64,000 bases of DNA, taken from Haliotis rubra (lineage: Eukaryota). The stretch spans positions 496,001 through 560,000 of the forward strand of contig NW_025765914.1 in assembly GCF_003918875.1 (NCBI RefSeq), written 5' to 3'. Of the stretch, positions 450 to 59,964 are shown in pieces; the stretch's first letter is position 1; the number at the start of each line of letters is the position of its first letter. Both the position numbers and the translations under genes were made by a program. Below the pieces are notes generated by a model. It searched no databases and was not told the DNA's origin. It was given only the letters and a program-made list of their open reading frames with translations.

Positions 450-1060
450 CTGGGCTGTTCTGGCAAATGAAATCCCACGTCCTCTGAGAGGTTATTATGG
501 GCAAGAAGAAGTCGTGGTTTCTACACTGACTGGCAGCGTTGATACAGTTCCAGTTCTCGTCCAGGTTTGACCTTACAAAAGCACCATGAGCAAGTGAGTG
601 AGTGAGTGGGTATGTAGGTATTATTGAGACCCCATTGCATGTTACTATAAATAGTATCACTCAGTGCCAGAAGGTAACGCATTTATCGCCAAATGCAATT
701 TTGAAGGTAGCTTATTTACCTGTACAAGCAAAGCATTTGTAGTACAACACTGTGCAAGTAAAGACAAGAAGCTGACGCATTTTCCCACCCAGAGGGTAAC
801 TCATTTAAGCTGTTCTATTTACATGTTATACCATAGAACGTGGCGTATTTACCACATACCACTACTGCGTATTACATAGAAGGAGAAGCATTTTCCTGAA
901 TACCACTATTCAGTATTCAGACCACATGTGTAATGGAATAGCTAAATGGCTAACATGGTTAATAGGGTTCGATTCCAGTGTCCGCTGCCATTAAATATTA
1001 CTGCATGTTGCTAGAAGTTGAATAAAATAATACTCGCTCACCTGTGTACTACAGGCATTG

Positions 1061-1094
<34 letters not shown>

Positions 1095-55604: not shown

Positions 55605-58600
55605 TGAATGAATACAATCACTACAGTGAGCAGTTACAGTGAGAGACTGACCATATTATTGCAGATTTATGACGAAATTAAGTAATCACTTTATATACTC
55701 AGGACAGAAACTTAATTGAAAAGTGACAATTATTTGCAATGCCACATGTAGCTGAGTAATTATTGTCACGTTGTTGTGGCAACGTGTACGTCATTTCAAA
55801 ATATGTCCTCCTTAAAAATGTTTGAAAGTCAAAATGTTTTGGTAAGTGGTGTAAACTTCACATTTAAACATAATGACTGGAAAACAAAACGTATTCTATA
55901 ACAATTGATTTCCGCAACGAAATAGTCTGTTTCCTTCAGAGTTTCCATGATTTTCATGTTATCACACTATTTGCTTTCTAAGTCATCATAAAACTGCTCG
56001 CCGAAACACTATAACCGCTGATTAAGAATGCGAATCGACTAAATTCATAATAACCAACTTCAGGCTGGCATAGAATCAGGAGTGTTTTCCGGCATGCCAT
56101 TCAATCCAAATTAATGCCGAGATCATCCTATGCCTGATTCTCGTACAGTCCGTCAACATTAATTTTCGCACCCAGGGTTTTGGGGATTTAATTCGACTGA
56201 GTATGTCTGTATCAGTTCTGATCAACTGCCATGAATGTACATGATAATGAATCAGGAAAATCACCGGGATTGCAAATTCAAGCACTGACTGATTATTTTC
56301 TGGTTTGGTAAAAGGATTCAAATAGTATATATCTGATAAGTATGAAATACATACTTAGGCGATTTCAAATTGCCAAAAGCGTGCGTTCCAAAAGTCAGGC
56401 TGACGGTAACTAAATAATTAAATATCTCATGCTAATTATTTCTAATTCTAATTCATGTCTTCTAGCCCCACTGCCATTCTAACTGTGCAGTTCTATTGTG
56501 TTTCACCATCCTAAGCCTCCAAACAATCCCGCGTTTTGCGTACAGCCAAAATGTATTATGTGCGTATGGACAAGCTGTTTTGTGATGAGGACGTAATGGG
56601 CTTCATTGATGATACCAATTTACCATTCTACCCCACCGCCCCTGTTTTGTGATGAGGACGTAATGGCATGATGATACCAATACCATTCTGTATGTCAATG
56701 CATACTGGTAGATAGTATGGAATAATATAAATTATTTACCACACATTATTCGAACGGCCAAGGCACTTAAGGAACGTTGGATGAAACTCCGAGCTAATCC
56801 AGCAATCCTTCCCCGCGACAAATGCTGAAAGTGACGAAGATGAAATGATTGGACAATTTATCGACGGACTGTTTGCGAGTGTCTATCATATCCACACATA
56901 CCTTCGATATAATCAGTATAATATATCTGACAATAACCAGTGAGAATATCTGTTGAGAATATCTGTTGAGAATATCATCTGCTGGGATCCCCACATCACC
57001 AAAATGAAAGTAAACAGACCTATGATTAAGCAAATAAATTCATAAATTATACTGATAATTAAAAGGGGTTGACAATGTTATTTTTCTAAACCAGTCAATC
57101 TCCTTATAGTGCATATAACCAGTGTCGTGTGGTTTTGCTTTACTTGAAAGAAGGGAGAGTTTATATAACCATTGCGAGCACAATTTCACATGACATGCAA
57201 GGTAAGCGATTTACAAAACCCTCTATACTCAATATCCCTTGACACCAAGGGAATCTATAGACCTATTGGCACATAATCACAGTATTAGACAAGAGTTCTC
57301 TTTCGTTAAAGAGAGATTAGTACATCATAAGTTTTATTATGTTTATCAAACTTCATGCGTCATACCTTGGCTGTTCTGGCAAATGAAATCCCACGACATC
57401 TGAGAGCTTCGTATGGCCTTATATAAGCCGTTGTCCCTACAGTGACTGAGAGAGTCAATGCAGTTCCAGCTTTCCTCCCGGATGTTTGACCTTACACAAA
57501 CAATCACCAATACAGAGTGAGTGAGGGAAGGAAGGAGGTAGGTGAGGAGGGAGTGAGTGATATTTCCCATTGTCAAATGCAGAAGACAACACATTTACCA
57601 ATACACGGCACCATTTAATATTGGAGTTACTTGTAACGCATTGACTCACGCATGAGTGAGTAAGTGAGTGAGTTTACTGTTACGCCGCACTCAGCAATAT
57701 TCCAGCTTTATTGCGGCGGTCTGTAAATAATCAAGTCTGGACCAGACAATCCAGTGATCAACAGCATGAGCATCAATCTGCGCAACTGGGAATCGATGAC
57801 CAAGTCAGCGAGCCTGACCACCCGATCCCGTTAGTCGCCTCTTACGACAAGCATGGGTTACTGAAGATCAATTCTAACCCGGACATTCACGGGTCCACTA
57901 ACTCATGTTACAGGAAAGATGATAAGTCACATTTACCTTTGCACCATTCGTTGTAAAGAAGCATTGTAAGATTACGCATTGGCCCATATAAATTGGAAGC
58001 TAACGAATTTGAAAAACGATTGAAAAGACTTGCAGTGAATTTAATTCACATGACATCGACGTGAATAGTCTGGAGGTAGACATAATGCCTAATTATGACA
58101 GTAAAACGTCTGTTGGATTTTATGATATCATTTCTAAGCTTTAATGAGATATCCACCATTTCGGAAAGCAATCATTACTTTTTTATCCAAATTTACTTCC
58201 ATCCACATTTATGACAAAATGCTCCTAATATGTACAACTGTCAAGTTTAGAAGAGTTGACTGAAGTAAGTGGCTACATTTACACTAGTGAGTCTAAACTT
58301 TTGATGGGTAGTGTATATGTGGAGCTGTCCGTATCACCAGTCATGATAAATTATATAACGAAACAAATCTTACCTCTTTGAATAAAAGGACATATTCTCA
58401 AAAGTTATTTATGTTCTATAAAATGGAAAACAATGTAGTGCCTCCTTATTTATCATCTCTCTTACAACATAAAGTATCTGATTCAACCACTTATACTTTA
58501 AGAAACCATGTAAACTTGCAAAGAATTAATTTTAGAACTAGTAACTATGCCACGTCATTCCTTCCTGACACATATCAGTATGTGGAATACTTTACCCTCA

Positions 58601-59964
58601 GACAGTACAAGCGTTCCATCCCTTGGCGAATTAAAAAAGAGAGCAATGTTACTCAAACAAATTACTTCGATCTTAACTACGGTTCACGATTCTGTCAAAT
58701 CAGTCACTCCCGCCTCCGACTTGGTTGCAGCGATCTCAACGCCGACATATTTAATATATGTATAGCTGAGAGACCAATGTGTAACTGTGGCTACCATGCT
58801 GAAGACAATCTGAATTATTTCTTTGTCTACCCCGACAAGATTTGTATTACTTTGAAAAAGGGTTTGATTTAAAATCTTTTCTTTATGGTCATTCCAGCTC
58901 AAACTTAAAAACGAATATGGAAATGTTGAAATCAGTGGGCAGTTTCATACTTTTATCAGGTAGATTTCCTGCTTTTGTAAAATAATAAGAAACACATAAC
59001 TCCATAATTTCGCAAAGATATGAAACATAATTACATGATTTTGCCATATACCTTTTAATATACTACCATAATTTGATTGACATGTGACTATAATTGCTAT
59101 ATTGATTACACTTGCCAACAACACTCACATGATTATTTTATGATGTCACCACAATTATATTTTCTTCTCTCTGTGTTGTACAGGAGAGGTGTTTGCATAA
59201 GCCCTGGGCTTGTAGACCGGTCCTCATTACTTGTTTTTCGAAATAAAATATGTTTAAACTACTTCAATAACATCGTTTACAAACATGCTACGGGTGTTAC
59301 TGTTTCTAGTTTAGTTACAAGTTCATTGATGAATAGGATAAATAAGAAGGGGGTCAACATACATCTTTGTCTAACACCACTAGATATCGTTTTGACACAA
59401 GCGCAATGGTAGTCATACACAATGATAAGTCACACAACTGAGAGCTTACTTACTCGCACGGTACAGCGAGCCTCCCATCAACAACAAGGCCTTCCAAACC
59501 CCCTGTGGCATGGAGAGGACTGAGGTTTTCCAGACAGGGATCGAGCTGCGCATAGCAAACATTTTCAACACCTACTGCAACGCTTGTCACGTTTACTATG
59601 TTCTCCTCACTATTTTGCCGGCGCTGTGCCTCATGTCCATCATTGGGAAACAGAGCTAGAGATAGAAATATAGCATTTTATTTAAAACCTGTTTTTAATA
59701 ACGAGGTTTTAGGTCATTACGCTTCGCATCCTCACTTTGATATTATGTTCGCCTGTTGTAATAGATACTTTGTGAGGAGGTCATTCATATTACTATAACC
59801 GTCTTAAAGGAGTATCTCAAGTCTATTGATTTCAGATTGTGGTCAGTCAGTAAATACATTGAGAAAACAATGAACTCGAGAATGTGAAACTTCTTAACAA
59901 AGTACTCACCAAATGAAAAACATATTGCTGGCAGATACAGAAGGAAGACAACTCGTCCAAACAT
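55308..59964 (-). CDS. G6: intact secreted 12-Cys protein, 194 aa, 5 exons
   Basis: Exons 59964-59910, 59655-59454, 57490-57366, 56824-56740 and 55425-55308 total 585 nt: MFGRVVFLLYLPAICFSFALFPNDGHEAQRRQNSEENIVNVTSVAVGVENVCYAQLDPCLENLSPLHATGGLEGLVVDGRLAVPCESNIREESWNCIDSLSHCRDNGLYKAIRSSQMSWDFICQNSQAFVAGKDCWISSEFHPTFLKCLGRSNNVCVPTCLQKAVAKMPDCSTEDAILLGLLAGISLPGDHASC*. Confidence 0.88.
55515..55600. repeat. (GA)n microsatellite in G6 intron 4
   Basis: Interrupted GA runs seen directly. Confidence 0.95.
57655..57896 (-). mobile_element. SINE family B in G6 intron 2
   Basis: Homologous to 27617-27860; (TCAC)n tail. Confidence 0.78.
58200..58950 (+). mobile_element. CR1/L2-type LINE 3' fragment in G6 intron 2
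   Basis: FYKM..PPYL, SFLP, HSRLRLGCSDLNAD..CNCG..ED..YFF motifs. Confidence 0.75.

What the first reader, a model, noticed from the sequence alone, without database searches (positions are those of the whole stretch)
450..59964. Unnamed tandem family of secreted 12-cysteine proteins hidden as short exons
Seen: six same-strand paralogs with one exon plan (55 / ~196-205 / ~122-128 / ~82-91 / ~103-121 nt; phases 1-2-1-2; G1 shows only exons 1-3). Three splice into intact 191-194 aa ORFs. The mature Cys frame in G4 is C-x6-C-x25-C-x10-C-x6-C-x19-C-x11-C-x12-C-x6-C-x3-C-x10-C-x22-C-stop, and the protein ends on Cys in all five copies with exon 5. Inference: six disulfides in two 6-Cys, probably helical, halves, loosely reminiscent of DUF19-like invertebrate secreted domains. 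There is no TM or GPI tail, so a soluble product is expected. A lineage-specific expansion like this suits mucus/defence, pheromone or ligand carrier, gamete recognition or shell-matrix roles; none is demonstrated.
Basis: partly seen in the sequence, partly recalled or inferred. Interest (0 to 1): 0.88.

Follow-up and report, generated by a model that had tools for sequence, protein, structure and literature searches.

The report
Fast-evolving secreted 12-cysteine abalone gene family
This stretch of the blacklip abalone genome holds six copies (three intact within the window, a fourth intact in the public model, two frameshifted) of an unstudied abalone-only gene family for small secreted, disulfide-locked helical proteins that probably share a fold with the nematode 'DUF19' domain and change unusually fast between species.

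Summary
Six minus-strand paralogs share one five-exon plan: 55, 195-205, 122-128, 82-91 and 103-121 nt, phases 1-2-1-2, all GT-AG. G4, G5 and G6 splice to intact ORFs of 191, 193 and 194 aa. The stated Cys spacing is exact, and every copy with exon 5 ends on Cys.

G1 is cut by the window edge but is intact in RefSeq. G2 and G3 each carry a single frameshift. All three assembly gaps lie in non-coding DNA, but the exon 4-5 joins of G4 and G2 each span a gap.

The genes are not hidden. RefSeq of Haliotis rubra models five of the six as "uncharacterized protein", and my G4-G6 models match those products 100%.

The family has at least 10 loci in H. rubra and at least 8 in H. asinina, with 1:1 orthologs in the same order. 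One gene each was found in H. rufescens and H. cracherodii. No hit appeared outside Haliotis, in Pfam, in the PDB or in the papers searched.

AlphaFold models are confident and all-helical. Fold and language-model searches repeatedly rank DUF19/CPG4 proteins first, but weakly.

New here: the signal and N-terminal segment is highly conserved while the mature domain varies strongly. The red/black abalone orthologs differ by 27 nonsynonymous and 1 synonymous codon change.

No RNA evidence was obtained and function is inferred.

The parts
2585..2639 (-). G1 exon 1 (start codon plus signal peptide, 55 nt)
   Evidence: equals RefSeq LOC124274567 / P0014
2051..2255 (-). G1 exon 2 (205 nt)
450..571 (-). 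G1 exon 3 (122 nt); exons 4-5 lie beyond the window start
2690..2696 (-). G1 TATA box, 57 nt upstream of the ATG
2925..3074 (.). assembly gap, 286 nt upstream of the G1 start codon (non-coding)
13616..13670 (-). G2 exon 1
13036..13230 (-). G2 exon 2 (195 nt), with a 4-nt deletion relative to the paralogs that shifts the frame; the only defect of G2
12051..12175 (-). G2 exon 3
11145..11229 (-). G2 exon 4
9455..9575 (-). G2 exon 5 (ends Cys-stop in the family frame)
9951..10098 (.). assembly gap inside intron 4 of G2
22743..22797 (-). G3 exon 1
   Evidence: RefSeq LOC124274572 / P0001
20996..21194 (-). G3 exon 2 (199 nt)
20675..20798 (-). G3 exon 3 (124 nt), with a 1-nt deletion that shifts the frame; the only defect of G3
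19502..19592 (-). G3 exon 4 (91 nt)
19245..19347 (-). G3 exon 5 (103 nt, ends Cys-stop in the family frame)
39068..39122 (-). G4 exon 1
   Evidence: G4 is 100% identical to P0010 / LOC124274569
32611..32806 (-). G4 exon 2 (196 nt)
31683..31807 (-). G4 exon 3
29231..29312 (-). G4 exon 4 (82 nt)
28588..28705 (-). G4 exon 5 (118 nt including the stop)
28740..28915 (.). assembly gap inside intron 4 of G4, 34 nt from the exon 5 acceptor
39173..39179 (-). G4 TATA box
48861..48915 (-). G5 exon 1 (the TATA box seen in the other copies is lost upstream)
   Evidence: G5 is 100% identical to P0012 / LOC124274574
48085..48280 (-). G5 exon 2
46896..47023 (-). G5 exon 3 (128 nt)
45477..45561 (-). G5 exon 4
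44385..44502 (-). G5 exon 5
59910..59964 (-). G6 exon 1
   Evidence: G6 is 100% identical to P0011 / LOC124274575
59454..59655 (-). G6 exon 2 (202 nt)
57366..57490 (-). G6 exon 3
56740..56824 (-). G6 exon 4
55308..55425 (-). G6 exon 5
60015..60021 (-). G6 TATA box; a conserved promoter block extends about 230 nt upstream of the ATG in all copies
13721..13727 (-). G2 TATA box
22848..22854 (-). G3 TATA box

Best explanation
SHOWN. The window is part of a tandem, same-strand array in Haliotis rubra, with at least 10 loci on one contig. The genes have five exons. The products are about 190-aa pre-proteins with these parts:
- an 18-19-aa hydrophobic signal peptide;
- a strongly conserved N-terminal segment of about 12 residues that ends in an almost invariant Arg-Arg-Gln, followed by a conserved N-glycosylation sequon;
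- a domain of about 145 aa, acidic (whole product after the Arg-Arg about 17.5-18 kDa, pI 4-5), all-helical, with 12 invariant Cys.

The array gains and loses members. It has 1:1 orthologs in collinear order in H. asinina. G5 has no orthologue among the H. asinina models sampled. G2 and G3 each carry one frameshift.

The mature domain changes very fast while the Cys scaffold and the pre/pro part are held. The ratio of nonsynonymous to synonymous change (dN/dS) is well above 1 between H. rufescens and H. cracherodii.

INFERRED. The 12 Cys form six disulfides that lock a helical fold distantly related to the nematode DUF19 / T20D4.11-like / CPG4 secreted domains. I put this at about 0.65. The protein is exported, possibly trimmed at the dibasic site, and acts outside the cell as a soluble binding or recognition module whose exposed residues are under diversifying selection.

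The design matches mollusc antimicrobial and cysteine-rich peptides and conotoxins: conserved pre-pro, invariant Cys frame, hypervariable surface, and a multi-copy array with turnover. I therefore think the most likely role is host defence, meaning binding of microbial or parasite molecules in mucus, gut or haemolymph. My odds for that specific role are only 0.35-0.4. The confidence given below is for the general statement: a real, secreted, DUF19-like recognition family under diversifying selection.
For: - Gene models match RefSeq products exactly.
- Family census, all 'uncharacterized protein' and Haliotis only.
- Array, orthology and collinearity.
- Exon plan kept in four species.
- All 12 mature Cys are invariant or nearly so in 16 sequences.
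- AlphaFold models: pLDDT about 90 over the domain, pTM 0.83 for the G6 domain, helices only apart from one short predicted beta hairpin.
- Foldseek against AlphaFold DB clusters, using two different paralog models, ranks DUF19-annotated or DUF19-like nematode and mollusc proteins first. Examples are A0A2C9KYN2 at probability 1.00, Q9TXS4 at TM 0.52/0.46, Q9XUQ6, and a CPG4 protein.
- Language-model features of three members put a PF01579 DUF19 cluster first (0.88-0.89, 184-187 of 256 features), followed by CPG4 and DUF1397 clusters.
- C. elegans DUF19 proteins are also single-domain secreted proteins of 140-220 aa. That family has 51 genes, 14 of them induced by infection (PMC3534327).
- Selection among H. 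rubra paralogs: dN/dS is 0.12-0.24 for the signal and N-terminal part against 0.53-0.68 for the Cys domain.
- Selection between H. rubra and H. asinina orthologs: dN/dS is 0.57 by counting and about 0.7 by maximum likelihood, not different from 1.
- Selection between H. cracherodii and H. rufescens: 27 nonsynonymous against 1 synonymous codon difference, none in the first 34 residues. dN/dS is 6.6 by counting and 11.9 by maximum likelihood. The likelihood-ratio test against dN/dS = 1 gives p = 0.0003.
- The per-site nonsynonymous difference of the mature part is 0.086 against 0.058 intron divergence, p = 0.04.
- A conserved TATA-containing promoter is present in five of the six copies.
Against: - No transcript evidence was obtained. 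Three H. rubra RNA runs of unknown tissue hold no contig on the G6 exons.
- No family protein came from a transcriptome-derived source in the protein searches.
- The DUF19 link is weak by the numbers. Foldseek E-values are 0.07-3, TM is mostly 0.4-0.54, and language-model scores are below 0.9, which the tool calls 'a lead only'. No member hits the Pfam DUF19, CPG4 or DUF1397 models even at E <= 1.
- The dN/dS above 1 result rests on one species pair with one or two synonymous changes (one purely synonymous codon difference; 1.5 by path averaging). Synonymous divergence there (0.011) is below intron divergence, so the ratio is inflated. Against introns the excess is only 1.2-1.5-fold.
- The proteins are acidic, unlike classical cationic antimicrobial peptides.
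- Cleavage at Arg-Arg is inferred from conservation alone.
- No tool here predicts signal peptides formally.
Confidence: 0.6

Rival explanations
1. Reproductive recognition proteins. The family would be made in gonad or gametes (egg coat or jelly, sperm, or spawning fluid) and take part in species-specific gamete or conspecific recognition. Like lysin, sp18 and VERL, it would evolve fast through sexual selection or conflict.
For: dN/dS is far above 1 between two sympatric Californian abalones, and nonsynonymous change is at or above intron divergence. This is the signature known from abalone fertilization genes. Abalone acrosomal proteins also sit in tandem arrays that duplicate and diversify (PMC9022041). 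The absence from three general RNA runs would fit tissue-restricted expression.
Against: Arrays of eight to ten copies with pseudogenes are unusual for abalone gamete proteins. There is no fold match to the lysin or sp18 structures in the PDB. The proteins are acidic and rich in Cys, unlike lysin and sp18 as I recall them. From my own knowledge, abalone sperm and egg-coat proteomes have been studied intensively without such a family being reported, and none was found in the papers searched. No expression data were available here.
Confidence: 0.2
2. Carrier of a small hydrophobic ligand or pheromone. The disulfide-locked helical bundle would enclose a lipid, sterol or waterborne cue, in the way of insect odorant-binding proteins, saposins or plant lipid-transfer proteins. 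The paralogs would differ in ligand specificity.
For: The domain is small, soluble, almost entirely helical, held by six disulfides, and present as many diversified paralogs. Insect DUF1397 haemolymph proteins are among the nearest language-model neighbours.
Against: No fold match to any solved carrier family was found. Ligand carriers seldom show dN/dS well above 1 over the whole surface.
Confidence: 0.12
3. Structural extracellular-matrix component. The family would be a shell-matrix or mucus protein, or a proteoglycan core like C. elegans CPG-4, acting as scaffold rather than recognition molecule.
For: The proteins are acidic, secreted and glycosylatable. CPG4-domain clusters are among the closest neighbours. 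CPG-4 is a chondroitin proteoglycan core protein (PMC2063922).
Against: There are no repeats, no low-complexity or Asp-rich stretches, and no conserved Ser-Gly glycosaminoglycan sites in the alignment. Scaffold proteins are not expected to show dN/dS above 1 with an invariant Cys frame. No abalone shell-proteome link was found, though sequences could not be compared with such data.
Confidence: 0.06
4. A decaying, functionless array whose gene models are annotation products.
For: Two of the six copies are frameshifted. G5 lacks the TATA box. No RNA support was obtained.
Against: Intact ORFs, the exon plan, splice sites and all 12 Cys are kept across four species. The pre/pro part has dN/dS of 0.12-0.24. 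dN/dS significantly above 1 cannot come from relaxed constraint alone. H. cracherodii has two RefSeq isoforms. From my knowledge of the NCBI pipeline, alternative isoforms normally need transcript alignments (inference).
Confidence: 0.02

Closest known systems
DUF19 / T20D4.11-like domain (Pfam PF01579), a large nematode family of secreted Cys-rich proteins of unknown function
   Same: Both are single-domain secreted proteins of 140-220 aa, and C. elegans has a large multi-copy family of 51 genes, 14 induced by infection (PMC3534327). From my memory of the Pfam entry, DUF19 is about 130 aa with 12 conserved Cys. DUF19 proteins are the top fold neighbours for two paralog models and the top language-model neighbour for three members. 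A Biomphalaria protein annotated as DUF19 is among the best hits, so molluscs do carry the domain.
   Different: No abalone member reaches the Pfam model even at E <= 1. Foldseek E-values are 0.07-3 and TM 0.4-0.54. The abalone family adds a conserved N-terminal pro-like segment with Arg-Arg-Gln. By sequence it was found only in Haliotis.
CPG4 domain (PF15481; C. elegans chondroitin proteoglycan 4) and insect DUF1397 (PF07165)
   Same: Both are neighbours by language-model features, and CPG4 also by Foldseek. Both are secreted invertebrate proteins.
   Different: There is no sequence-level match. CPG-4 is a glycosaminoglycan-carrying core protein (PMC2063922). No such sites are conserved in the abalone family.
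Mollusc cysteine-rich secreted peptide families with a conserved pre-pro region and hypervariable mature part (conotoxins, Mytilus MgCRP-I)
   Same: The evolutionary design is the same: highly conserved signal and pro part, invariant Cys frame, hypervariable mature residues, and multigene families (abstract of PMC4558851).
   Different: Those peptides are short, with three disulfides, and are unrelated in sequence and fold. The abalone domain has about 145 aa, six disulfides and is helical. This is a 'works like' comparison, not membership.
Abalone acrosomal proteins lysin and sp18
   Same: Both are abalone-specific, secreted, helical, arranged in tandem arrays and evolving rapidly with dN/dS above 1 (PMC9022041). 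From my own knowledge, their genes also have five exons.
   Different: There is no fold or sequence match to the solved lysin or sp18 structures. This family has 12 Cys and is acidic. sp18 has one disulfide, and lysin is basic as I recall.

Membership tests
DUF19 (PF01579) | Significant match to the Pfam profile (gathering score) | tested here: not met
   hmmscan of 17 family members at E <= 1 returned no DUF19, CPG4 or DUF1397 hit. The exon pieces also gave none.
DUF19 (PF01579) | Domain of about 130-150 aa with 12 conserved cysteines (Pfam description, from memory) | tested here: met
   There are 12 invariant or nearly invariant Cys within about 145 aa in 16 sequences of four species. The spacing could not be compared with the Pfam model because no DUF19 sequence was in reach.
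DUF19 (PF01579) | Secreted, mostly single-domain proteins of 140-220 aa in multigene families | tested here: met
   The products are 180-213 aa with an N-terminal hydrophobic signal, and there are at least 10 loci in H. rubra. The comparator figures come from PMC3534327.
DUF19 (PF01579) | Same three-dimensional fold | tested here: inconclusive
   Two models gave DUF19-annotated proteins among the top hits, with probability 0.9-1.0 but E 0.07-3 and TM 0.38-0.54. Both sides are predictions. No DUF19 structure was found in the PDB searches.
DUF19 (PF01579) | Profile-profile homology (HHpred or hhalign against the family alignment) | not testable with these tools
   No DUF19 sequences or profile could be fetched.
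Abalone lysin / sp18 acrosomal family | Fold or sequence similarity to the solved lysin or sp18 structures | tested here: not met
   Neither appears in the sequence search of the PDB, in Foldseek against the PDB or in the VIA-align wide search.
Pre-pro cysteine-rich effector design (conotoxin or MgCRP-like; a functional analogy, not a homology family) | Conserved signal and pro region with a hypervariable mature region on an invariant Cys frame | tested here: met
   dN/dS is 0.12-0.24 in the signal and N-terminal part against 0.53-0.68 in the domain. Between H. cracherodii and H. rufescens there are 0 changes in the first 34 residues and 27 in the remaining 161. The Cys are invariant. Proteolytic processing at Arg-Arg was not tested.

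The most novel reading that the evidence does not exclude
The family is a previously unrecognised class of abalone extracellular recognition proteins under lysin-like positive selection. It would be either a diversifying immune-recognition or effector repertoire, or a new player in gamete or conspecific recognition. It would also give the first functional and evolutionary handle on the large, functionally blank DUF19/CPG4 superfamily outside nematodes.
Probability: 0.3. Interest if true: 0.75.

Novelty: new variant of a known kind. Interest (0 to 1): 0.5.

Why it matters
Abalone are the textbook system for rapid, adaptive evolution of secreted proteins, yet that knowledge rests on a few fertilization genes. 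This is an independent, unnamed multigene family with the same signature: an invariant scaffold, a hypervariable surface, and dN/dS above 1 between red and black abalone.

If it is a defence family, it is relevant to disease in farmed and endangered abalone, such as withering syndrome, herpesvirus and Vibrio. If it is reproductive, it adds a new component to a classic speciation model.

If the DUF19 relation holds, the family links a nematode 'domain of unknown function' with dozens of copies per genome to a mollusc family in which selection marks the functional surface.

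Tried and rejected
- Pfam on single exon peptides gave nothing. The one hit, CIDR1_gamma at E 0.011, is noise.
It found the family, but three further hits (P0004-P0006) are bacterial repeat proteins and false positives. In hindsight a full-length profile would have reached further.
- The first word-index search with P0007 missed most of the family. 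Alignment queries recovered it.
- RNA evidence: three RNA runs of the species show reads only on a high-copy repeat in intron 2 of G6 and none on exons. This proves nothing about other tissues or other paralogs.
- The PDB by sequence, Foldseek and VIA-align gave only generic helical bundles covering half the domain, with Z at most 7.3.
- The ESM-Atlas search by shape gave only unrelated helical proteins.
- Internal duplication of two 6-Cys halves is rejected.
- A relation to lysin or sp18 is rejected.
- The 505-aa ORF at 49092-50609 is a translated 23-bp minisatellite, not a gene.
- LOC identifiers were not found in any paper.

Full report
ORGANISM AND LOCUS. The window has about 40% G+C, no long ORFs and three runs of N. 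Exact protein look-ups place it on contig QXJH01000192.1 of the Haliotis rubra (blacklip abalone) assembly GCA_003918875.1.

THE OBSERVATION. A self-comparison shows six copies of one unit. Translated comparison locates the fifth exon.

I defined every exon by its homologous AG and GT borders. All six copies share the plan 55, 195-205, 122-128, 82-91 and 103-121 nt. The phases are 1-2-1-2 and all introns are GT-AG. Exons 4-5 of G1 lie beyond position 1 of the window.

G4, G5 and G6 read as 191, 193 and 194 aa. These models are 100% identical to RefSeq products LOC124274569, LOC124274574 and LOC124274575. G1 is LOC124274567, which is intact. G3 is LOC124274572, which RefSeq reads through a frameshift to a 162-aa product. 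G2 had no matching model among the RefSeq products retrieved.

G2 has one defect, a 4-nt deletion early in exon 2. G3 has one defect, a 1-nt deletion in exon 3. All their other exons are open in the family frame. They are therefore either very young pseudogenes or assembly errors, and I could not check reads to decide. No other family exon lies in the window.

THE GAPS. None interrupts an exon.
- Gap 2925-3074 lies 286 nt upstream of the G1 start codon, beyond the promoter block shared by the paralogs.
- Gap 9951-10098 lies in intron 4 of G2.
- Gap 28740-28915 lies in intron 4 of G4, 34 nt from the acceptor of exon 5.

The 191-aa ORF of G4 therefore joins two exons across unread sequence. Three things support the join:
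- Exon 5 shows the same close orthology to H. asinina P0013 as exons 1-4 (80% identity overall).
- Intron 4 has a matching size, 525 nt here including the estimated gap against 536 nt in H. asinina.
- RefSeq makes the identical join.

I did not try to fill any gap.

START CODON AND PROMOTER. About 230 nt upstream of the ATG are alignable among all copies. A TATATAT box lies 57 nt upstream of the ATG in five copies and is lost in G5.

RefSeq extends several products by 15 aa from an upstream ATG. That ATG lies only about 6-12 nt downstream of the TATA box. If this TATA is used, the upstream ATG is probably not in the mRNA (inference).

FAMILY CENSUS. A profile of exon 2 against 1.84 billion representative proteins found three abalone representatives and three bacterial repeat proteins, which are false positives. 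Alignment queries then recovered more:
- ten H. rubra products including LOC124274568, -571, -576 and -579 outside the window, all on the same contig, which with the unmodelled G2 makes at least 11 loci;
- eight H. asinina products on one chromosome;
- one gene each in H. cracherodii and H. rufescens.

All are named "uncharacterized protein" and none carries a Pfam domain. Nothing outside Haliotis was found, but sensitivity was limited. None of the six RefSeq gene identifiers searched appears in any paper of the library.

A maximum-likelihood tree gives 1:1 H. rubra / H. asinina orthologs for G1, G3, G4, G6 and LOC124274568. In H. asinina the orthologs of G6, G4 and G3 lie in the same order and orientation. 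The array is therefore older than the split of these two species. G5 has no orthologue among the H. asinina proteins sampled.

The gene next to the single Californian copy has exons with family-like Cys motifs. It is probably a divergent paralog (not followed further).

THE PROTEIN. After the signal peptide comes a short, highly conserved segment ending in Arg-Arg-Gln, which is at least 90% conserved. Next is an N-x-S/T sequon present in most members. Then comes the 12-Cys domain.

The part after Arg-Arg weighs about 17.5-18 kDa and is acidic in 14 of 15 members. There is no hydrophobic tail.

AlphaFold2 with the family alignment gives pLDDT of about 90 for the domain of G4. For the G6 domain alone it gives pLDDT 89 and pTM 0.83. 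Both are helical apart from one short hairpin, and the N-terminal 45 residues are disordered. The two halves of the domain are not repeats of each other.

WHAT IT RESEMBLES. No member hits any Pfam family, and DUF19 is absent even at E <= 1. There is no PDB match by sequence or fold.

Against AlphaFold DB clusters, both models return the same small set on top:
- DUF19-annotated proteins from nematodes and from the snail Biomphalaria (probability up to 1.00);
- C. elegans Q9TXS4 and Q9XUQ6 (TM 0.41-0.52);
- a CPG4-domain protein;
- uncharacterized oyster and (from my recognition of the accession, since the tool hid organism names) Lottia proteins.

The E-values are only 0.07-3.

Language-model features of three members, which are 40-50% identical to one another, each put a PF01579 DUF19 cluster first (0.88-0.89, 184-187 shared features). 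CPG4 and insect DUF1397 clusters follow. The tool calls scores below 0.9 a lead only.

Two methods agree, and size, Cys count and secretion also agree. C. elegans DUF19 has 51 genes of 140-220 aa, mostly with a signal peptide, and 14 are induced by infection (PMC3534327). I rate a distant DUF19/CPG4 relationship at about 0.65. Membership is not established.

HOW IT EVOLVES (new here).
- Among H. rubra paralogs, dN/dS is 0.12-0.24 for the signal plus N-terminal part and 0.53-0.68 for the Cys domain.
- H. rubra / H. asinina orthologs give 0.57 by counting and about 0.7 by maximum likelihood. This is not different from 1 even though scaffold residues are invariant.
- The H. cracherodii and H. rufescens orthologs sit in syntenic flanks that align at 94-98% identity. 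They differ at 27 nonsynonymous codons, one synonymous codon and a 3-codon indel, with no change in the first 34 residues.
- For that pair, dN/dS is 6.6 by Nei-Gojobori counting and 11.9 by maximum likelihood. The likelihood-ratio test against dN/dS = 1 gives p = 0.0003.

There is a caveat. Synonymous divergence in that pair (0.011) is lower than intron divergence (0.018-0.08, mean 0.058), so the ratio is inflated. Against introns, nonsynonymous change in the mature part is 1.5-fold higher, with p = 0.04. The result comes from one species pair and needs site models on more species.

EXPRESSION. The only reads call showed no contig of three small H. rubra RNA runs on the G6 exons. Only a high-copy repeat in intron 2 was covered. 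A DNA run covers the locus and differs at four listed exonic sites (two nonsynonymous, two synonymous; the tool withheld 13 further differences across the stretch). Transcription is therefore not shown here.

Indirect support is the existence of RefSeq models in four species and of two isoforms in H. cracherodii. My reading that isoforms require transcript alignments is an inference from general knowledge of the NCBI pipeline.

INTERPRETATION. The following are shown or well supported:
- a real, conserved, secreted-type gene family;
- a disulfide-rich helical domain;
- an old tandem array that gains and loses members;
- constraint on the pre/pro part and on the Cys frame;
- very fast change of the mature protein, probably adaptive.

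The following are inferred: six disulfides, the DUF19-like fold, processing at Arg-Arg, and an extracellular binding or recognition role.

The design resembles mollusc cysteine-rich effector families, which also pair a conserved pre-pro region with a hypervariable mature part (abstract of PMC4558851). That resemblance, the multi-copy turnover and the infection-responsive nematode relatives lead me to favour host defence at 0.35-0.4. Next come gamete or conspecific recognition (0.2), a ligand or pheromone carrier (0.12) and a matrix role (0.06).

VERDICT. The genes are already modelled in RefSeq but are unnamed and unstudied. I rate interest as moderate, at 0.5. The family is not a new kind of system. 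It is an uncharacterized, rapidly evolving family in a model organism for adaptive protein evolution, and it has a plausible tie to a large domain of unknown function.

Noticed in passing
window 14292-14804 (-), 30593-31123 (+), 36124-38440 (-): Three Tc1/mariner-type transposase remnants (Pfam HTH_Tnp_Tc3_2 and DDE_3). One lies between G2 and G3. One lies in intron 3 of G4. One lies in intron 1 of G4 and explains why that intron is 6.3 kb long.
   Followed up: partly
window 49248-50537: A 23-bp minisatellite of about 55 copies lies directly upstream of the G5 promoter. It creates a spurious 505-aa open frame (49092-50609, minus strand).
   Followed up: yes
window 11443-11794, 19931-20058, 29675-30092, 45701-46498: Intron 3 of G2, G3, G4 and G5 each holds a 49-52-bp minisatellite. 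Copy number varies from about 2.4 to 16. The G2 and G5 units clearly share a core; G3 shares a shorter motif with them, and the G4 unit shows no obvious similarity to the others.
   Followed up: no
window 57660-57990 and 58152-58316 (intron 2 of G6): A very high-copy interspersed repeat. It has enormous depth in both the DNA run and the RNA runs, with many contigs running on into unlike sequence.
   Followed up: no
window 60007-60009 and the homologous sites of G1 and G5: RefSeq starts several products at an upstream ATG, adding a 15-aa extension. That ATG lies only about 6-12 nt downstream of the conserved TATA box, so the extension is probably an annotation artefact.
   Followed up: partly
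window about 48960-48990 (upstream of G5): G5 has lost the TATA box kept in the other five copies. It has no orthologue among the H. asinina proteins sampled and sits on a long branch of the tree.
   Followed up: partly
L003 24346-27103 and L004 28139-30817: The gene downstream of the single family member in H. cracherodii and H. rufescens (171 and 169 aa) has exons with family-like motifs: Cys-Trp-x11-Cys, and a C-terminal exon resembling exon 5. It is probably a divergent paralog that sequence searches miss.
   Followed up: partly
window 55324, 56814, 56817, 59597 (G6 exons): Contigs of a DNA run of the same species differ from the window at four listed exonic sites of G6 (13 further differences across the stretch were not shown by the tool). 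Two change the protein (D190A, I38M) and two are synonymous. They are either allelic variation or assembly errors.
   Followed up: partly
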